Source: Thecamonas trahens ATCC 50062 (taxonomy: Eukaryota; Protista; Apusomonadida). From it: 64,000 nt of DNA. The DNA lies in NCBI RefSeq assembly GCF_000142905.1, contig NW_013657675.1, positions 248,001-312,000 of the forward strand. The letters run 5' to 3'. The notes beneath the pieces were generated by a model, which was given only the letters and a program-made list of their open reading frames with translations, had not been told where the DNA came from and searched no databases. Both the position numbers and the translations under genes were made by a program. This document shows, in pieces, positions 1-37,830 of the stretch (positions are counted from its first letter, which is position 1; every line of letters starts with the position of its first letter).

Positions 1-899
1 CGGCTCGTTATCGACATCGCTCGCAGCTGCGGCGACGGGCGTGGCCAGCTGACGGGCATCGACCATGCCGACCTGGCGAGCGAACGCCGGCGGGAGCGGC
101 TTGGCAAACGCGCTCACCCGCATGTGCTCCGGCTGCGGGTTCGGCGGGCGGTGGACGCCAAATGGACTGGCGCCCTGGGTGTAGCTCATCCGCTGGACCA
201 TGCCAAGAACGAGGTCCATGTCAAGCCCGGAACCATCACAGAGCGTATCCACCAGCGTGTCTGCGCTCCCGCCCTTGCCCACCTGCCTCACCAGCGGGCG
301 CGCCGCCCGGTCAGGTGCGGCATCAGGCCGGGTGATGTGCGGGTGTGTGGCGTGGACCGTCTCCGTCACCGCTGGCAGTGCCGTCAGCACCTCTGCCGAC
401 GTCGCCGCCACCATCGCCCGCGCCTTGGACGACGTCTCCCGCAGCGCCCGCTTGAGCAAATAAGCTCTCCGGACCCGTTCAACTACTCCGTGCCGCCGAC
501 CCCCCCCCGCCCCAGTCCCAATCCCCCCGTCGCATATGACCATGTCCCAGCACCGGTATCAGCCCCCTGTAAGTCCTCCTCCTCCCCCTCCCTCCCCCCC
601 TCCCTCCTCCTTTCCCTCCCCAACCTACCTCTCGCCACCTCGGTCTGCAGCGCAGCATCTGTTCGTAGGATGTCGGTGACGAGGGCCAGCATGGCCTCGT
701 CCGTTGGTGTTGGCCCAATGCCCTCAGCGGCGGCACGGAGAGCGGCAAAGTAGCCATTGAGGGCAGCGGCGAGGGCAGCTAGCGCTGCACGGGCTGCGCG
801 GGTGCTGCTCCCACCGCCACCCATATCGCCTCCTGCCCGACTGCCCTCGCTTGCGCCCACCACTGCCACCCCCACGCCACTTGCCTCTGTCTGCGACAT
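1..899 (-). CDS. MED4: Mediator subunit 4-like protein; 2 exons (899-629, 482-<1), runs off the window start
   Basis: Phase-1 intron 628-483 (G|GTAGGT...GTAG|TT) joins ..EVAR-V-ERVRRAYLL. Exon 2 encodes LVLGMVQRMSYTQGASPFGVHRPPNPQPEHMRVSAF, resembling the Med4 C-terminal RISY...PPxPQxExMR motif. Confidence 0.6.
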
Positions 900-969
900 G
901 CCCTCCCGTCACAAGTCGAGTGTCCGTCACCGCGCCGCCGCCGCCACCGCCACCGCCACCGCCACCGCG

Positions 970-2301
970 CTACGCTCTCTCTCCGTCGCATGCCATGCGC
1001 GATACACATCGCATCACATCCTGCCATTTACTACCCCTCGGCAGTAAAGTAGTGGGCCGTGCCCGAGTCCGAGTCGGACGCTGACCAGTCTGACGACGTC
1101 TTGCCATGCCGGCTGGCGCTATGCCGGCTGGTCGCCCGCCGACGCCGGCTGGTCCGACGTCCGCTGGTCCGACGCCGACTGGTGCGATGCGAGCTAGCTG
1201 CCTCGCCCTCACGCCGCCGCCGCTTTTCTTGCGGCTGGCTCGCGGCGATCCTGGGAGCGAGGCGGTAACGGGAGCAGCGAGGTCTGCGGACCGAGTGCGC
1301 GAGGCCGACGTCGCCGATACCGGACGGTCACTGCAGCGACGGCGGTGCGGGCGACTGGCGGACTTCACCTCGGGCTCGTACTTCATCTCAGGTTCGGACT
1401 CAGATACGAGCCTAGCCAGAGCGGCGTCGTCGCTCGCACGGGTGTCGCCCGCCTCGTTGTACGGCTCGTTGGCGCGCCAGGCCTCGATGGCGGTAAACGA
1501 AGCCTCGATGCCGGCGGAGAAAGGGACAAAATCACGGTGGAGATCGGCGGTGCCGCCGAGCTCGTGCGGGAGCTGCGAGGCGAGGATGTGCTCTTGTAGC
1601 TCGGCCTGGTAGTTGTCGGTGAGAAAATGGACCTTGGCGCGGGTGGAGGCGTCAAGGAATGGCTTGGCGAGAGCCCAGAGGACCTTGAAGACCCGGCCGG
1701 CGTTGATGATGTATGCCGCGCCGAGGCGCTCGGGGTAGATGGCCTGCAGCGAGAGAAAGCCCTTTGCGCCTGCACGATCGAGGTTGGACCATCCAAAGTC
1801 AGCATAGTCTGCAATCATAGTGACCTGCTGGACCGGGGCACCCGGATAGAGCTCGTGCCGCTCGGCGTACTCCATCATGAACATGTTGGTCGCCATGTAC
1901 TGATCGAGCGGCGAGATGGAGCTTTTGTGACGCTTGTTGACAAACCAGGAGACAACCCGCCCGGCCTTATCGCGCCCGAGGGGATGGACCTTGTCTGTGG
2001 CGAGCTCGGCCCGGATCCGCGGGTCATCGAGGCTGAGGAGGAACGGCTTGTGCTCGAGACGCCAGGCGATCATGTCACGGACGTGCTTGATCGTCGCCTC
2101 ACGCTCAAAGGCCACAGCCTTGCCGAACCGGAACGTGTCGTACAGTGTGTGGACAAAGGCGTCGACGCCTGCATCCGCCCGCTCCGCGTTGAGCTTGCCC
2201 AGCTCGGCCGCCACAGCAGCCACCACCGCCGCGTGCGTCGCCTCGAGTGTCCCGGACGCCAGCGCCTCCACATACGCTGGATCCGCCTCTGCCATTCGCA
2301 T
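970..2301 (-). CDS. CRAL-TRIO/Sec14 lipid-binding protein with low-complexity basic tail
   Basis: [62 protein letters not shown] and LPHELGG are typical CRAL-TRIO motifs. Start chosen at ATG 2301 (alternative 2295). Confidence 0.85.
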
Positions 2302-2474
2302 TCCTGTCCCGTGCGCCACCGTGTCGGCAGCAAGGGGGTGGTGACAGGTGCTTCTGGCCGAGTCTTGCTGGGGAGGGGGGGGGGGGGGGGGGAGTGGGTG
2401 GCTGACGCGAGTCACACACTGCACATGCAGAGCGGGACGATGTGCATTTATATGGGGAAAAAGCTGACGAGAGC

Positions 2475-2689
2475 TCAGATGGCAGCGAGAGCTGCACCGC
2501 CAGCATCACCGGCGGCGCCAGCGGTATCGGAGGCACGGCGCTTGACCCACCAGACAGCGCCGACGACGCCTGCGACAACGAGCGCGATAAAGATGACGAC
2601 ACCTGCGACAATGCCCGCAATAAGACCACCCGAGGCGCCTGATGACGACGACGGCGAGCCGCCACTGATCTGCCCGGCCGAGGCCGAGG

Positions 2690-2729
<40 letters not shown>

Positions 2730-4238
2730 ACCCGAGTCTGAGCCTGAGCCTGTGCCCGAGCCCGTACCCGAGCCTGAGCCCGAGCCCGAGCCCGAGCCCG
2801 AAGAGACCGGCGGCGACGGCGGCGGTGGGGTGCTGGCTGGGTTGATCGTGAGCTGGCCGGCGTTGATGACAAAGTCCTCACCGATCTCGACGAGCATGTG
2901 GTAGACGGCGGGCGCGAGCGATGATGTCGACATCGTAAGAAAGCTCACGTCGCGAATGCCGTTCGATGGGATGTCGGTGAGCTGACCGGAGAGGAGGAGA
3001 ACATCCGTTCCGCGGCTAAGGACGTCGTCGGTCGAGGCGTAGAGCGTAGCGGTGATATCCCCGGTTCCAGCATCGCCAACGTTGGCGACGCGGACGGCGA
3101 CCTGAGCGATGGTGCCGCCGACGTTAAGAGCCGAAGGCGTGACAACACGGACAAATGAGCCTGCCCAGGTCCGCATGTGCTCGACGAGCTGGACGGTGGG
3201 GGTAAACGACCTGCCCGCCCCGACCCAGCCGTTAATGTCGTTGATGGTTGACGCGATGAGCTTGCTCACATAGCCAGCCGAAAACTGCGGCGAGGCAAAC
3301 GGGTTGGTGGCAGAGAACAGGCCAGTCACGTTGCCGTCCTCGGCAAAGAACGGTCCACCATTGGTGCCGAGCGGCATCCAGACGTCAGCGTACATGGTGG
3401 CATCGGGCGACGGCGGCGACGGCGCGAGTGGCGTCGGCGGCGTCGGCCCGGCGTTGACCGTCTGGACGCCGAGCGACTCACCGTCAGCCATGCCGGCAAC
3501 ATCCGGATCAATGCCGTAGCCGTAGGCGGTGAAAGGACCGTAGAGGGGGGCGGTGGGGACAGAGCGCTGCGGAGGCCAGCCAGTCCGATCGCCGGTAAAG
3601 CCGTCGACAAAGATGATGCCGTAGTTGTACTGGAGGGCGTCAATGGTGCCGAGGTCGGTGGCGGGCGTCGACTGCCACTCGGAAGGAAAGCTGTCGAACG
3701 GTGCGATGCCATTAAAGGTGCCGAACGGGTTGTCGATCTGCGCCCCGCCGCGGATGCACCCCTTGCAGGCTGCCGGCGTGACCCGGATCTCGGCGGCAGC
3801 TGCAGCCGGAGGGCTCGGACCGGCCGACGGCGGCAGCGGGCGGCGATACAGCGCCGCCGCCGACGTCAGCACCGCGTTCCGCCCGGCCATGACGCCCGTA
3901 AAGGTTCCTGAGAACGTGCCAGCCGGGTCGTCGGTGTAGCGGACCTTGACACGGACAATCGAGTAAGCAGTCGGATCAGAAACAGCGGTGATGACCACCG
4001 GCGGCGGCGGACCAGGCGGCGCAGACTGGAGCAGCTTGCGGGCCATGCCGGCCCCACCTTCCGCACTCACCACCGGAGCATGGCCGTCGTGGGCTGAATG
4101 GTTGTCACCCAAAAAACGCTCTCCAGCCGAAAGCTTAGCCACCTGCGGTGCCTGGCCAGGGAGTACGTCAGCAGCCGCGCCTGCGGCGAGCGCAACAAGA
4201 AGCAGAGCACCAAGTGCAGCAAGAACGCGAGTCTGCAT
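2475..4238 (-). CDS. Type I membrane protein: signal peptide, trypsin/V8-like pseudoprotease, CARDB/Ig-like domain, GS linker, TM helix
   Basis: [23 protein letters not shown] signal. [19 protein letters not shown] / YNYGII / GTNGGP align with the S1 protease LTAAHC / DYGII / GxSGGP motifs. [16 protein letters not shown] is CARDB-like. [30 protein letters not shown] is the TM. Confidence 0.7.
2690..2798 (-). repeat. Hexamer tandem repeat (GGCTCA/GGCTCG) encoding a (GS)n linker
   Basis: gagcct/gagccc repeated about 18 times on the + strand. Confidence 0.9.
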
Positions 4239-34897: not shown

Positions 34898-35361
34898 CAA
34901 CCCAGTGTACGAGAGAGCCAGTGCCGACTCACAATACCTCTCGGTGCTCTCCTCCTCGTCGGTGGCTGCGGTCCAGTGACCAAGTGTCGGTTGGGTGGTC
35001 GGGGACGGGGGCGGGAGTGGCCTGTTGTGTGGCTGCTGTCATTCGGTTCACTGGTCGGTTGGCAACGGGAGGTGGCAGGGCAGGCAGGCAGGCAGGGGGA
35101 GGGAGGGGGGGGGGGGGGGGGCGGATGACAGGCAGGTAGTGGGCAGAGAGGCTATGGGACAGATAATCAGCAGTCAGTAGCAGAGTATATTACCTACCAC
35201 CCGCTTCTACCGCCACTCGTAAAACATCGCTCCGTTGATCAAGCATACTCTCTCCGCTACCCATCATCAGCCCTTGCCGCTCTGACCACCCTCTGCCACA
35301 CTGGGCCGGCTCCGCTCTCGCTACTTTTGTCAATCCTGCTACCACCTCTCGCTACCTAACT

Positions 35362-37830
35362 ATGGCCACGTCGGGCAAGGACGAGGTCGGGAGGGTTCTG
35401 CCGGTCTCAGCTGTTGTCCCGCGGGCCCACGCATCGGCTCTTGGCCCGTTCTTTGCGTCGTACTTGGTGGACCACTCGGCCGGCCACCGCAAGCTGCCGT
35501 CGCTCCAGGCTATGGTTCTGCTCGCCATGCTCAACTCGGACGAGGCTTGGTTGCAGGGCTCGCTCTTTGACTTGGCCTTTCCGCTCCGCGCTGCCGCCCT
35601 CCGCGCCCTCATCGACCACGGCACAGTGACTGCTGCCGGCAAGGTTGCCCTGCCCGACTCGGCTGCCTACGTCCTCCGCTCCGACCCGGAGCTCCTCGAT
35701 GCGCTCGACGAGTTTGTTGCTGCTCTCAAGGCCGATCTAGCAGTCATGGAGGCTGCAGAAGCCACAGAGCGTGCTGCGACCGGCAAGTCGGCAGCGTGGA
35801 CGCCTGCGGGCAAGCCAGCGCTCGCCCAGTTGCCGGTGCCGGGCGACGAGTCGCTGGCCCACCCTTCGCTGTATGCCTCAGGCATGTTTGCGTCTACAGG
35901 TGCCGCCGGCGGCGGCGACGCAAGTGGTGAGAGTAAGCCCGAGCTGGATGCGCTATCGGACGTGGATTTGACGTGCTGGCCGCAGCGGCCGGCGTCGGGG
36001 TACGTGACGCAGGTCGATCTCGACCGGTTGCGGTCGTTCACCCACCCACCACCGTTTGTTGACGCTATCTGCGAGTGCATCTGCATTCTCCTTCACCGGC
36101 CAGTCATGTTTGCGCAGCAGGTCCGACATGAGCGCCACCTCCTCCGCTACCTCGACGACATTGAGCCGTCGACGCTCACCAGCCGCGATCTCGACCGGCT
36201 CCGGCCCTACGTCCGCCACCCGCACTTTCACAATCCGGAGCTCGCCCAGCGAGTCTCCGAGTCTGCCGCCGGCCTTGCTGCGCTGGTTGTCGACATCTAC
36301 AAGTACGCCCGCTTTGCCGAGCACCCGCAGCTCTCGCTCGTCCGCCACCTCTACAAGCGGGTCTATGCGCTTCAGTCGCAGCTCCTCCACGTCGAGTCGG
36401 TCTCGTACTCGCACCGCTACATGGGCTCGGCCGCGCGTGGCGTCGACCTCTTCCTCTCGCTTGATGACTCTGGTTCGCCGCGGCGAATTCGGCGCGGCGG
36501 CTCGCAGATCTCGCTCGGCCGCTCCCTCGCGCCGTCGGCGTCACGGACGACGCTCTCGGTCCGGTCGGCCGGCTCGTCGGTCCTCCCGCTCCCGTCACGC
36601 GACGGGGCGCTGGCCGACCTTGGCATCCTCAAGCTTGCCGACGTCATTGAGCTGCAGACATACCACGCGCCGCCGCCGCGGACCGCCGCCGTCCTCGAGG
36701 GCTTACTCCTGGTCCTCGGCCGCGACTCGGACGCCGCGCCGTGGAAGCCTGACGGCCCGGCGGGCCAGGTCGAGCACTATGGCTCGCAGACTCTGCGGCG
36801 GCTCCGGTCGGCCAAGCTTGTCCACGCCATCGCCACGCTCGACCCGCGGCTGCTGGCGCCCGACGTTGTCGACGAGCTCAAGCGACTCGTGACCGACCCG
36901 TTCATGGGCGAGGAGGAGCTCTGCCGCGAGTCGTTCCCGGCCGCCAAGCTCTTCCGCTGGCTGCAGTGTGTCTACGTCCTTGCCCGAAGCGAAGTCAAAT
37001 CGCTCGAGGCCGCAGCCAGGGCCGAGGAGGCTCAGGCAGCCGCTGCTGGTGCTGTCGGCGACGCTGTCAAGGCCACTTCGGATCTCACCACTCCCACCGG
37101 CGAGCCGATCACCCGCGGCGCCCGGGTTGTGGTCCGCGGCTACCTCGGGACCGTCCGCACACTCACCACCACCCAGTTTGACCCGGTCGGCAAGTGGGTC
37201 GGCGTCGAGTTTGACGAACGGGTCGGCAAGAACGATGGCTCGGTTGACGGCGTCCGCTACTTTGAGTGCCCGCCCAAGCACGGCCTCTTTGTCCGCCCGG
37301 CCCGTGTGGAGCTGTTCCACCCACCGCCGCCGCAGGTCAAGGATCCGGTCTCGGCTGTCCACGAGCGCAAGAAGCTCGATGGTCGCTCCTCTCTTTCGCC
37401 ATCGGCCCGCCACGCCCACGCCCGCAAGCGCCTGCTTGGCCTCGACGGCGCCCGCTCGCCGCGCCGCCGCGCCGCGCAACAGCAGCCCGACGACAATGAC
37501 ATCCCGCGCCCGCCCGCTGATCTCGGCGACGCCGTCCTTTGCATCGTCCCCTCGGCGCCGGCCCTGGCCCCGGGCACCGTCCGCTTCAAGGGCAAGGTCG
37601 GTTTTGCTGCCGGCCTCTGGTACGGCATCGAGCTTGATGAGCCTGTCGGCCGCACGGATGGCACCGTCAACAACGAGTGGTACTTCCTCGCTCTCCCCGA
37701 TCACGGCGTCTTTCTCAAGCGCGCCCGCTTCGCCCTCACCTCTGCACCCGCCGAGGTGGCCGCCGCCACGGCCGAGTTACAGCGCCTCCGCCATGACAGC
37801 GACGTCGGCGCTTCGCCCGCGAGCACCTGA
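35362..37830 (+). CDS. Protein with two dynein-heavy-chain MTBD-like domains and two CAP-Gly domains
   Basis: DLDRLRSFTHPPPFVDAICECICILL..PELAQRVSESAAGLAALVVDIYKY; DVIELQTYHAPPPRTAAVLEGLLLVL..ESFPAAKLFRWLQCVY; WVGVEFDERVGKNDGSVDGVRYF; WYGIELDEPVGRTDGTV. Confidence 0.8.
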   Translation: MATSGKDEVGRVLPVSAVVPRAHASALGPFFASYLVDHSAGHRKLPSLQAMVLLAMLNSDEAWLQGSLFDLAFPLRAAALRALIDHGTVTAAGKVALPDSAAYVLRSDPELLDALDEFVAALKADLAVMEAAEATERAATGKSAAWTPAGKPALAQLPVPGDESLAHPSLYASGMFASTGAAGGGDASGESKPELDALSDVDLTCWPQRPASGYVTQVDLDRLRSFTHPPPFVDAICECICILLHRPVMFAQQVRHERHLLRYLDDIEPSTLTSRDLDRLRPYVRHPHFHNPELAQRVSESAAGLAALVVDIYKYARFAEHPQLSLVRHLYKRVYALQSQLLHVESVSYSHRYMGSAARGVDLFLSLDDSGSPRRIRRGGSQISLGRSLAPSASRTTLSVRSAGSSVLPLPSRDGALADLGILKLADVIELQTYHAPPPRTAAVLEGLLLVLGRDSDAAPWKPDGPAGQVEHYGSQTLRRLRSAKLVHAIATLDPRLLAPDVVDELKRLVTDPFMGEEELCRESFPAAKLFRWLQCVYVLARSEVKSLEAAARAEEAQAAAAGAVGDAVKATSDLTTPTGEPITRGARVVVRGYLGTVRTLTTTQFDPVGKWVGVEFDERVGKNDGSVDGVRYFECPPKHGLFVRPARVELFHPPPPQVKDPVSAVHERKKLDGRSSLSPSARHAHARKRLLGLDGARSPRRRAAQQQPDDNDIPRPPADLGDAVLCIVPSAPALAPGTVRFKGKVGFAAGLWYGIELDEPVGRTDGTVNNEWYFLALPDHGVFLKRARFALTSAPAEVAAATAELQRLRHDSDVGASPAST

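What the first reader, a model, noticed from the sequence alone, without database searches (positions are those of the whole stretch)
35362..37830. Motor-less protein with two dynein microtubule-binding domains plus two CAP-Gly domains
Seen: segments ~36000-36320 and ~36625-36990 each follow the dynein heavy chain stalk-tip pattern (D..EL+s...PP....V.e....LL ... F.pe.....S..A..L..WV...Y). Each is followed by a short helical stretch, and one canonical GKNDG and one variant GRTDG CAP-Gly follow. No AAA or Walker motifs occur in the 822 aa. Known: the MTBD (PF12777) is normally allosterically controlled through the stalk by the AAA ring, and CAP-Gly binds EEY/F tails of alpha-tubulin and EB1. Inference: a four-site passive microtubule cross-linker or plus-end factor built from a detached dynein foot, possibly competing with dynein for its lattice site. 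I do not know this architecture as described.
Basis: partly seen in the sequence, partly recalled or inferred. Interest (0 to 1): 0.8.

Follow-up and report, generated by a model that had tools for sequence, protein, structure and literature searches.

The report
Motor-less dynein-foot plus CAP-Gly protein
This Thecamonas trahens gene encodes a protein that carries two copies of dynein's microtubule-binding "foot" and two CAP-Gly tubulin-tail binders but no motor. It belongs to a wider, apparently undescribed set of motor-less proteins built from that foot.

Summary
Window 35362-37830 (+) is one uninterrupted 822-aa ORF, and metagenomic orthologues of 804-806 aa are colinear with it.

- **CAP-Gly:** Pfam finds two domains (E 1e-40), with no AAA domain and no Walker A motif.
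- **Dynein-like segments:** both fall below Pfam's PF12777 cut-off. Profiles match solved dynein microtubule-binding domains (MTBDs) at E 1e-7 and 2e-5. AlphaFold models (pLDDT 94 and 89) match dynein MTBD structures at Z 14-15, against about 5 for unrelated chains.
- **Organism:** the genome is Thecamonas trahens ATCC 50062.
- **Not unique:** this genome has two more motor-less MTBD genes. One is AMSG_04602 (coiled coil + MTBD + CAP-Gly), probably the gene this scan noted earlier on another contig. A search of 1.8 billion proteins found about 50 motor-less proteins with 2-9 tandem MTBDs, from a sponge, Diphylleia, Picozoa and environmental samples. None is named.
- **Literature:** searches found no description of this class.

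The most likely function is a multivalent, non-motor microtubule-associated protein. This is inferred, not shown. Three caveats apply:

- MTBD2 is acidic.
- MTBD1 has Arg where dynein has a conserved Glu in helix H1.
- The second CAP-Gly has a degenerate motif (GRTDG).

The parts
35362..37830 (+). Whole gene: uninterrupted 822-aa ORF (stop codon included)
   Evidence: Colinear with the 804-806 aa orthologues P0001 and P0159-161. No plausible in-frame intron in the only large insertion relative to the orthologue.
35398..35766 (+). N-terminal conserved domain (res 13-135), unknown fold. Its last helix (about res 105-135) aligns weakly to dynein CC1 in some PDB hits.
   Evidence: 44% identical to P0001 and shared with the C22 paralogue. 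No Pfam or PDB match. CC1-like extension of the alignments.
35767..35970 (+). Low-complexity acidic linker (res 136-203), poorly conserved
   Evidence: 12% identity to the orthologue; 44-aa insertion relative to P0001
35971..36321 (+). MTBD1: dynein-type microtubule-binding domain, helices H1-H6 (res 204-320). PP at 229-230. R222 replaces the conserved H1 Glu. The H6 Trp is replaced by Leu.
   Evidence: Profile E 1.2e-7 to DNAH6 MTBD. HMM 91 bits. AF2 pLDDT 93.9. Foldseek 6rza_X TMq 0.73, rmsd 2.5. VIA Z 14.9. Residue comparison. 62% identical to the orthologue.
36322..36417 (+). Helix after H6 (res 321-352), in the position of dynein CC2 but without the dynein VxPKR signature. It is the most conserved segment of the protein.
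   Evidence: Predicted helix 119-146 of the model. 78% identity to P0001. Alignment.
36418..36594 (+). Basic Ser/Arg-rich linker (res 353-411), pI 11.8
36595..36981 (+). MTBD2: second dynein-type microtubule-binding domain (res 412-540). E430 keeps the H1 Glu. PP at 437-438. The H6 Trp is kept. Overall acidic.
   Evidence: Profile E 2e-5 to 2rr7 (dynein-c MTBD). HMM 59 bits. AF2 pLDDT 89.1. Foldseek 6rza_X/6rzb_C TMq 0.67. VIA Z 14.2. pI 5.4.
36715..36783 (+). Insert between H2 and H3 of MTBD2 (res 452-474), at the position of the axonemal-dynein 'flap'
   Evidence: HMMER aligns it to the flap of 2rr7. Low pLDDT of 54-66 and no secondary structure. The flap is defined in PMC6629372.
36982..37074 (+). 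Helix after H6 of MTBD2 (res 541-571), Ala/Glu-rich, weakly conserved
   Evidence: Model helix 114-159. 29% identity.
37096..37326 (+). CAP-Gly 1 (res 579-655), canonical GKNDG at 622-626
   Evidence: Pfam PF01302. PDB E 1.5e-15 to the CLIPR-59, CLIP-170 and p150 CAP-Gly domains. Motif.
37327..37509 (+). Basic linker (res 656-716), pI 11.4, Ser/Arg/Lys-rich
37510..37743 (+). CAP-Gly 2 (res 717-794), variant motif GRTDG at 763-767 (GSSDG in the orthologue)
   Evidence: Pfam second stretch. 1whh E 2.4e-13. Motifs. 60% identity to the orthologue.

Best explanation
The gene encodes a non-motor microtubule-associated protein of the apusomonad Thecamonas trahens. One chain strings together five elements:
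- a conserved N-terminal domain of unknown fold;
- two CAP-Gly domains;
- basic Ser/Arg-rich linkers (pI above 11);
- a highly conserved helix after MTBD1.

There is no AAA ring and no long CC1/CC2 stalk, so the MTBDs cannot be switched by ATP-driven registry shifts. If they bind, they must do so constitutively, or be regulated some other way, for example through the linkers.

The most likely mechanism has three parts. The MTBDs would sit on the tubulin intradimer groove of the lattice. CAP-Gly1 would hold the C-terminal EEY of alpha-tubulin or of an EB protein. The basic linkers would add electrostatic tethering. Together these would give a multivalent, high-avidity binder that stabilises, bundles or marks tyrosinated microtubules and occupies the motor-binding site.

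Shown in silico: the domain identities and folds, the absence of a motor, conservation across species, and the presence of the EEY ligand. Inferred: microtubule binding, valency and cellular role.
For: - **Gene integrity:** uninterrupted ORF with colinear orthologues.
- **MTBD homology:** E 1.2e-7 and 2e-5 against solved dynein MTBDs. The segments also hit this genome's own dynein heavy chains.
- **Fold:** Z 14-15 against dynein MTBD and stalk structures, about 5 for unrelated chains. Every top Foldseek hit is a dynein MTBD.
- **CAP-Gly:** 137.6 bits, with a canonical GKNDG in the first domain.
- **Ligand:** T. trahens alpha-tubulin ends in ...VEEY.
- **Constraint:** MTBD1 (62%) and the helix after it (78%) are as conserved as the CAP-Gly domains (60-65%), while linkers are 12-40%.
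- **Recurrence:** the same MTBD + CAP-Gly pairing occurs in a second, non-orthologous T. trahens gene, AMSG_04602, which passes Pfam cut-offs for both domains.
- **Context elsewhere:** motor-less MTBDs are fused to cilium or microtubule-type modules (CFAP97 domain, WD40).
- **Linkers:** pI 11.4-11.8.
Against: - No binding data of any kind.
- Pfam PF12777 is below its cut-off.
- MTBD2 is acidic (pI 5.4) and MTBD1 is near neutral (pI 8.0). The medians are about 9.0 for dynein MTBDs and 8.8 for other motor-less MTBDs.
- The H1 Glu, which pairs with alpha-tubulin R403 in dynein (PMC4298687), is Arg in MTBD1 here and Lys in the orthologue.
- The H6 Trp is lost in MTBD1.
- CAP-Gly2 lacks the GKNDG motif in both species.
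- The AF2 alignments contained dynein fragments, so the models are not independent of the homology inference.
- The exact 822-aa protein is absent from the 15-billion-protein collection, so there is no public gene model or transcript to lean on.
Confidence: 0.68

Rival explanations
1. The MTBD-like domains keep the fold but have been repurposed as protein-protein interaction or scaffold modules. They might bind a partner through the highly conserved post-H6 helix. Only the CAP-Gly domain(s) and basic linkers would contact tubulin or EB proteins, making this an ordinary CAP-Gly adaptor with unusual helical domains.
For: - Acidic MTBD2, and charge reversal at the H1 Glu in MTBD1.
- Loss of the H6 Trp in MTBD1.
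- Long branches for both domains in the tree.
- The most conserved element is the helix after H6, not the H1/H3/H6 face.
- All apusomonad MTBD-like domains are less basic than dynein ones.
Against: - MTBD1 is conserved at 62% over the whole domain.
- Basic residues are kept at the H1 (R224), H3 and pre-H6 positions.
- MTBD2 keeps the H1 Glu, the PP motif and the Trp.
- The domain is paired twice independently with CAP-Gly in this genome, and elsewhere with ciliary-type modules.
Confidence: 0.22
2. The protein is chiefly a lattice-site competitor. By occupying the dynein/kinesin site on tyrosinated microtubules it would gate motor traffic, for example on flagellar roots or the proboscis of this gliding flagellate, rather than cross-linking or stabilising microtubules.
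For: The dynein MTBD binds the intradimer site (PMC6629372). CAP-Gly1 would add selectivity for tyrosinated tubulin, since alpha-tubulin ends in EEY. With no motor or stalk, any occupancy would be static.
Against: Purely inferential. Nothing distinguishes it from the stabiliser/bundler reading. It has the same weaknesses in binding-residue conservation.
Confidence: 0.1
3. The architecture is an artefact: a dynein heavy-chain fragment or pseudogene, or two neighbouring genes read through as one ORF in GC-rich DNA.
For: GC-rich DNA (about 66%) gives many long spurious ORFs. The exact protein is not in the public collection. Another T. trahens model (XP_013757929.1) appears to fuse a BRCA2-like gene with the paralogue.
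Against: - Four independent metagenome contigs encode colinear 804-806 aa orthologues with all four domains.
- Domains are conserved while linkers diverge.
- There are no AAA remnants on either side.
- The MTBDs are only about 20-25% identical to this genome's own dynein MTBDs.
Confidence: 0.03

Closest known systems
Dynein heavy chain microtubule-binding domain (MTBD; stalk tip, the central part of Pfam PF12777; structures 3ERR, 6RZA, 6RZB, 2RR7, 5AYH)
   Same: Same six-helix fold (Z 14-15). Same signature: acidic/basic H1, an invariant PP after H1, and an S-x-A-A-x-x-L H6 motif. MTBD2 has an insert at the H2-H3 'flap' position, as in axonemal dyneins.
   Different: - Not embedded between AAA4 and AAA5.
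- No long antiparallel CC1/CC2 stalk.
- The universal stalk prolines and the VxPKR motif after H6 are absent.
- Two copies in one chain.
- Less basic.
- The H1 Glu is replaced in MTBD1.
- Below Pfam's cut-off.
Motor-less tandem-MTBD proteins found here. All are unnamed or hypothetical, e.g. Oopsacas minuta KAI6652785.1, Diphylleia rotans EP00002_P001838, Picozoa EP01043_P067298, an MMETSP transcript, and T. trahens AMSG_04602.
   Same: Dynein-type MTBD folds outside any dynein, usually in 2-9 tandem copies with short helical flanks and no AAA domains. The T. trahens member also carries a CAP-Gly domain.
   Different: - The eleven checked pass Pfam PF12777 and the group is mostly basic (median pI 8.8). 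The window protein is more divergent.
- Partner domains differ: CFAP97/Hemingway, WD40, a long N-terminal region, or none.
- MTBD + CAP-Gly was seen only in the apusomonad lineage.
CAP-Gly +TIPs and linkers (CLIP-170/CLIP-115, CLIPR-59, p150Glued, TBCB/TBCE, KIF13B tail)
   Same: One canonical CAP-Gly (GKNDG) flanked by basic Ser-rich stretches, as in CLIP-170 and p150. Tandem CAP-Gly arrangement. The alpha-tubulin EEY ligand is present in this organism.
   Different: - No long dimerising coiled coil was recognised.
- No zinc knuckles or EEY tail at the C-terminus (it ends ...GASPAST).
- The second CAP-Gly has a degenerate motif.
- The N-terminal two thirds are MTBD folds, which none of these proteins has.
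Toxoplasma gondii ICMAP2 globular domain on intraconoidal microtubule 1 (PDB 9YA2 chain L; PMC12819142)
   Same: A non-dynein protein seen bound to the outside of a microtubule with 8-nm periodicity. Its resolved roughly 160-residue helical domain is the best non-dynein structural match to both models (Z 8.4 and 6.8).
   Different: Z is in the range the tool calls ambiguous for helical bundles. No sequence similarity was detected. Assigning chain L to ICMAP2 is my inference from the paper's text. The authors do not call it dynein-like, and it binds between protofilaments as a dimer.

Membership tests
Dynein MTBD (PF12777 central region) | Scores above Pfam's gathering threshold for PF12777 | tested here: not met
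   14.6 bits (whole protein) and 19.2 bits (MTBD1 alone) against a cut-off of 24. MTBD2 gets no hit.
Dynein MTBD (PF12777 central region) | Significant sequence homology to solved dynein MTBDs | tested here: met
   Profile E 1.2e-7 (MTBD1 against DNAH6 2780-2890) and 2e-5 (MTBD2 against 2rr7). All hits are dyneins.
Dynein MTBD (PF12777 central region) | Six-helix H1-H6 fold | tested here: met
   AF2 pLDDT 93.9 and 89.1. Foldseek TMq 0.73 and 0.67 to 6rza_X. VIA Z 14.9 and 14.2. Caveat: the AF2 alignments included dynein fragments.
Dynein MTBD (PF12777 central region) | Invariant PP after H1 and the conserved H6 motif (S-x-A-A..L..W) | tested here: met
   P229-P230 and P437-P438. The H6 Ser/Ala/Leu residues are kept in both. 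Trp is kept in MTBD2 but is Leu in MTBD1.
Dynein MTBD (PF12777 central region) | Conserved H1 Glu that pairs with alpha-tubulin R403 (Dictyostelium E3390; PMC4298687) | tested here: inconclusive
   MTBD2 keeps it (E430). MTBD1 has R222, and the orthologue has Lys. The mapping is by alignment only.
Dynein heavy chain | MTBD carried on a long antiparallel CC1/CC2 stalk with conserved prolines, between AAA4 and AAA5 | tested here: not met
   No AAA family and no Walker A. The dynein 'P...' CC1 start and 'VxP[KL][RK]' after H6 are absent. Only 28-45 residue helices follow H6.
Dynein MTBD (function) | Binds the tubulin intradimer site on microtubules | not testable with these tools
   Needs co-sedimentation, TIRF or cryo-EM
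CAP-Gly (PF01302) | Pfam match above the gathering threshold | tested here: met
   137.6 bits against 26.5, two stretches. PDB E 1.5e-15 and 2.4e-13.
CAP-Gly (PF01302) | GKNDG motif that lines the EEY/F-binding groove | tested here: inconclusive
   CAP-Gly1 has GKNDG (GKHNG in the orthologue). CAP-Gly2 has GRTDG (GSSDG in the orthologue).
CAP-Gly (PF01302) | An EEY/F ligand is available in the organism | tested here: met
   T. trahens alpha-tubulin ends in ...DYVEEY
CLIP-170 / p150Glued-type +TIP | Long dimerising coiled coil plus C-terminal zinc knuckle/EEY tail (CLIP-170) or dynactin shoulder (p150) | tested here: not met
   No such Pfam or PDB matches outside the CAP-Gly domains. The C-terminus is ...GASPAST. 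No coiled-coil predictor was run.
Motor-less tandem-MTBD proteins (group recognised here, no published name found) | Two or more dynein-type MTBD domains in one chain without AAA domains | tested here: met
   Two domains at 204-350 and 412-571. Comparable proteins have 2-9 domains.

The most novel reading that the evidence does not exclude
Motor-less MTBD proteins may be an old, pan-eukaryotic class of microtubule-associated proteins, in which the dynein 'foot' works as an autonomous, stalk-independent lattice reader. They were found here in Apusomonadida, Porifera, CRuMs and Picozoa, and in marine protist and environmental data. If the class predates or parallels the dynein radiation, it bears on where dynein's MTBD came from: a free-standing MAP domain captured by an AAA+ coiled coil, or repeated escape of the domain from dynein genes.
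Probability: 0.3. Interest if true: 0.85.

Novelty: new variant of a known kind. Interest (0 to 1): 0.62.

Why it matters
The dynein MTBD is understood as a slave of the AAA+ ring: its affinity is set by stalk registry. A natural protein family that uses the same fold with no ring or stalk would be a ready-made test of what the domain does alone, including its default affinity state, lattice-site choice and flap function. It would also add a new class of MAP that shares the motors' binding site.

Pairing it with CAP-Gly puts a lattice reader and a tubulin-tail reader in one chain, which suggests selective recognition of tyrosinated microtubules. Apusomonads are generally placed as close relatives of opisthokonts, and a sponge also has motor-less MTBD proteins, so the finding bears on the cytoskeletal toolkit of early Amorphea.

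It also shows that Pfam-based annotation hides the most divergent members. This gene would appear only as a 'CAP-Gly protein', and it was not retrievable as a protein model at all.

Tried and rejected
1. **Hidden intron.** I checked whether the 44-aa insertion relative to the orthologue (nt 35773-35904) is an in-frame intron. No GT...AG pair gives a length divisible by three. Rejected.
2. **Phylogeny.** A tree of 150 MTBD domains was meant to show whether motor-less MTBDs are one clade or which dynein class they derive from. It is unresolved: 128 columns, 69 open forks, and long branches for the window's domains. It shows only that MTBD1 groups with the C22 paralogue (99*), and that MTBD1 and MTBD2 do not group together and are only about 20% identical, so a recent duplication is unlikely.
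3. **Hit ranking.** The big search ranks motor-less proteins above dyneins, but whole-sequence scores sum over several repeats. The best single-stretch scores are equal, at about 60 bits for both P0018 and the dynein fragment P0019. I therefore do not claim the window's MTBDs are closer to motor-less ones.
4. **N-terminal domain.** No Pfam or PDB homologue.
5. **ESM Atlas.** Unavailable both times.
6. **Non-dynein structural matches.** I tried to identify 9fqr_Xl and 9e5c_2e from the literature and could not. 9ya2_L is assigned to ICMAP2 only by inference.
7. **P0003.** This 401-aa truncated 'version' of the protein comes from a metagenome contig at 1.2x coverage. The contig matches the window at 99.6% over 1348 nt and then diverges, so it is probably chimeric and not evidence for an isoform.
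8. **MTBD + CAP-Gly elsewhere.** Neither the word-index search with the sister gene nor the top 150 hits of the big search found any outside the apusomonad lineage. Both searches have limited reach.
Full report
**1. The object.** Window 35362-37830 (+) is a single open reading frame of 822 codons, in DNA of about 66% G+C. Two results tie the genome to Thecamonas trahens ATCC 50062. The paralogue on contig C22 translates identically to the C-terminal part of T. trahens XP_013757929.1. A related gene on contig C20 matches T. trahens AMSG_04602 at 100% over the searched region. This agrees with earlier notes of this scan.

The exact 822-aa translation is not in the 15-billion-protein collection. 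No model of this locus came back from either protein search. The one exception, P0003, is a 401-aa product of a metagenome contig at 1.2x coverage. That contig matches the window at 99.6% for 1348 nt and then diverges, so it is probably chimeric.

The gene model nevertheless looks sound. Four metagenome contigs encode colinear orthologues of 804-806 aa (P0001, P0159-161; about 48% identity) with all four domains. The only large length difference, a 44-aa low-complexity insertion, has no in-frame GT...AG solution.

**2. Checking the observation.** Pfam gives two CAP-Gly domains (137.6 bits, E 1.3e-40) and nothing of the AAA type. PF12777 (the dynein stalk/MTBD family) reaches only 14.6 bits, or 19.2 bits for MTBD1 alone, against a cut-off of 24. 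There is no Walker A motif. The CAP-Gly motifs are GKNDG (622-626) and GRTDG (763-767).

Against the sequences of solved structures, residues 215-318 hit the MTBD of DNAH6 (E 3e-4) and residues 409-537 hit 2rr7, the dynein-c MTBD (E 1.3e-4). Small profiles improve this:
- window + orthologue + paralogue, MTBD1: E 1.2e-7;
- window + orthologue, MTBD2: E 2e-5.

Dyneins take all the significant hits. The segments also hit this genome's own dynein heavy chains. An iterated local HMM places the domains at 204-350 (91 bits) and 412-571 (59 bits).

**3. Fold.** AlphaFold2 with 50-sequence alignments gave pLDDT 93.9 for MTBD1 and 89.1 for MTBD2. The only weak part is residues 452-474 of MTBD2.
- Foldseek against PDB returns dynein MTBDs at every top rank. 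For MTBD1: 6rza_X, TMq 0.73, rmsd 2.5 Å. For MTBD2: 6rza_X and 6rzb_C, TMq 0.67.
- VIA-align against 48,161 representative chains, which does not rely on Foldseek, gives Z 14.9/14.7/14.0/13.8 (MTBD1) and 14.2/14.1/13.2/12.7 (MTBD2) for 5ayh, 3err, 6l4p and 8i3j. Unrelated chains reach about Z 5.

One caveat: the alignments fed to AF2 contained dynein fragments, so the models are not independent of the sequence homology. They do agree with it.

**4. How these domains differ from a dynein's foot.**
- Dynein MTBDs from this genome and elsewhere start with a conserved CC1 proline and continue after H6 into 'V-x-P-[KL]-[RK]' and a long CC2. The window's domains, and the other motor-less MTBDs, diverge right after H6.
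- Only short helices follow H6 (28 and 45 residues in the models). MTBD1 has no helix directly before H1. MTBD2 has a 10-residue stub.
- Some PDB alignments extend from MTBD1 back over helix 105-135 as if it were a CC1 remnant. A 70-residue low-complexity linker lies between, and I could not test whether it pairs with the post-H6 helix.
- The invariant PP after H1 is present in both domains. The H1 Glu, which pairs with alpha-tubulin R403 in dynein (Dictyostelium E3390; PMC4298687), is kept in MTBD2 (E430). It is Arg in MTBD1 (R222) and Lys in the orthologue. The H6 Trp is kept in MTBD2 and lost in MTBD1.
- MTBD2 has a 20-residue or longer insert where axonemal dyneins carry the 'flap' between H2 and H3. 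HMMER aligns the insert to the flap of 2rr7. In DNAH7 the flap reaches the neighbouring protofilament (PMC6629372).
- Charge: dynein MTBDs have a median pI of 9.0 and other motor-less MTBDs 8.8. The window's domains are at 8.0 and 5.4.

**5. The rest of the protein.** The linkers after each MTBD/CAP-Gly unit are strongly basic and Ser/Arg-rich (pI 11.8 and 11.4), like the flanks of CAP-Gly domains in CLIP-170 and p150 (established knowledge). Identity to the orthologue, by segment:

| Segment | Identity |
|---|---|
| Post-H6 helix 321-352 | 78% |
| CAP-Gly1 | 65% |
| MTBD1 | 62% |
| CAP-Gly2 | 60% |
| N-terminal domain | 44% |
| MTBD2 | 38-52% |
| Linkers | 12-40% |

The MTBD folds are therefore under constraint comparable to the CAP-Gly domains. 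The helix after MTBD1 is the most constrained element, which suggests a partner or dimer interface. The N-terminal domain has no detectable relatives outside this family. T. trahens alpha-tubulin ends in ...DYVEEY, so the canonical CAP-Gly ligand exists.

**6. Relatives.** In the same genome, a profile census finds 17 MTBD matches:
- the two in this gene;
- one in a C22 paralogue that has the N-terminal domain and one MTBD but no CAP-Gly;
- one in a C20 gene with a long coiled coil, an MTBD with a large insert, and one CAP-Gly;
- 13 others, which lie in long open frames; the four I inspected (L004, L005, L006, L017) are dynein heavy chains.

The C20 gene is AMSG_04602, publicly called only 'uncharacterized' or 'CAP-Gly domain-containing'. 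Its precomputed Pfam hits are PF12777 + PF01302, and both pass the cut-offs here. It is probably the gene noted earlier in this scan as s1-751755.

A profile search of 1.84 billion representative proteins gave 233 hits at E ≤ 1e-3. Beyond orthologues and many dynein fragments, about 50 proteins carry 2-9 tandem MTBD domains. The eleven I scanned all pass PF12777 and show no AAA domains. Examples:

| Protein | Length | MTBD copies | Source or partner |
|---|---|---|---|
| P0152 | 1568 aa | 9 | ENA assembly |
| P0005 | 937 aa | 5 | N-terminal CFAP97/Hemingway domain |
| P0017 | 682 aa | 3 | Sponge Oopsacas minuta KAI6652785.1; CFAP97 domain |
| P0012 | 780 aa | 2 | WD40 propeller |
| P0008, P0011, P0016 | 1150-1277 aa | 4-5 | Long shared N-terminal region; P0016 is from MMETSP |
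| P0007 | 386 aa | 2 | Diphylleia rotans |
| P0009 | 392 aa | 2 | Picozoa (the two repeats are identical, see below) |

None carries a functional name. A few with identical repeats (P0009, P0013, P0020) could be assembly artefacts. Those with divergent repeats cannot be.

CAP-Gly co-occurs with MTBD only in the apusomonad proteins among what I retrieved. Both searches have limited reach.

**7. Literature.** Six searches on motor-less, stand-alone, tandem or 'MTBD-like' dynein domains, on the PF12777/IPR024743 accessions, and on Thecamonas found nothing describing such proteins.

The nearest experimental precedent is structural. The best non-dynein matches to both models are three chains from microtubule-bound cryo-EM complexes: 9ya2_L (Z 8.4 and 6.8), 9fqr_Xl (Z 7.9 and 8.1) and 9e5c_2e (Z 6.0 and 7.3). 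From the paper's description, 9ya2_L is most likely the globular domain of Toxoplasma ICMAP2: about 10% of a 1,678-residue protein, bound to the outside of intraconoidal microtubule 1 at 8-nm spacing (PMC12819142). The authors do not relate it to dynein. These Z values fall in the range the tool flags as ambiguous for helical bundles, so I treat them as leads only.

**8. Mechanism and rivals.** The best-supported reading is a multivalent non-motor MAP with three kinds of contact:
- two lattice readers of the dynein type that cannot be switched by an ATPase;
- one canonical tubulin-tail/EB reader, plus one degenerate CAP-Gly;
- basic tethers.

Such a protein would bind with high avidity, could bridge adjacent dimers, protofilaments or microtubules, and would occupy the motor site. 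All binding steps are inferred.

The main rival is that the MTBD folds have been repurposed and only the CAP-Gly part touches tubulin. The acidic MTBD2, the H1 charge reversal in MTBD1 and the dominance of the post-H6 helix in conservation support this. The overall conservation of MTBD1 and the repeated pairing with microtubule-related modules argue against it. An artefact is very unlikely.

**9. Verdict.** The function is plausible but untested, and 'four sites' is optimistic. The gene is not a one-off. It is a divergent, CAP-Gly-bearing member of a broader set of motor-less MTBD proteins that databases partly catalogue but that no paper I could search describes. I rate it a new variant of a known kind, meaning known domains in an undescribed use, with moderately high interest.

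Noticed in passing
L003 (G000:C22:15332-18664), ORF 43-2025 (+); P0004: The public T. trahens model XP_013757929.1, 'breast cancer type 2 susceptibility protein' (2589 aa), joins a BRC-repeat BRCA2-like protein to the MTBD paralogue. The paralogue's own ORF starts with ATG inside the locus. This is probably a gene-model fusion of two neighbouring genes.
   Followed up: partly
L022 (G000:C20:100418-103834), ORF 796-3303 (-); P0174 = AMSG_04602: A second T. trahens gene has a long coiled coil, one MTBD with a large H2-H3 insert, an acidic linker and one CAP-Gly (GRNDG). It passes Pfam cut-offs for both PF12777 and PF01302 but is publicly named only 'uncharacterized'.
   Followed up: partly
P0005, P0152, P0017 (Oopsacas minuta KAI6652785.1), P0115/P0117: Proteins that join an N-terminal CFAP97/Hemingway domain (PF13879, seen in P0005 and P0017) to 3-9 tandem dynein-type MTBDs, in a glass sponge and in large ENA assemblies. 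This points to a ciliary motor-less MTBD family in animals.
   Followed up: partly
P0012 (780 aa, ENA metagenome): A seven-blade WD40 propeller fused to two MTBD domains. This is another motor-less architecture.
   Followed up: no
PDB chains 9ya2_L, 9fqr_Xl, 9e5c_2e: The only non-dynein chains above Z 6 for both MTBD models all come from microtubule-bound cryo-EM maps: the Toxoplasma intraconoidal microtubule, the bovine sperm doublet and the T. brucei doublet. They may be unrecognised MTBD-like domains in structural MAPs. Only the first could be tentatively named (ICMAP2).
   Followed up: partly
window 36322-36417 (res 321-352): The helix after MTBD1 is the most conserved stretch of the whole protein (78% identity to the orthologue, against 60-65% for the CAP-Gly domains). 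It is unexplained and may be a dimerisation or partner interface.
   Followed up: no
L007 (ENA ERZ505273 contig, 1596 nt): A low-coverage metagenome contig is 99.6% identical to window 35154-36501 and then diverges. This shows that T. trahens-like DNA is present in an environmental sample. The contig is probably chimeric.
   Followed up: partly
L025 and L027 (G000:C1 and C38): T. trahens alpha-tubulin ends in ...DYVEEY. The beta-tubulin tail also ends in an aromatic residue (...DYEPEY). This may matter for the many CAP-Gly fusion proteins that earlier notes report in this genome.
   Followed up: no
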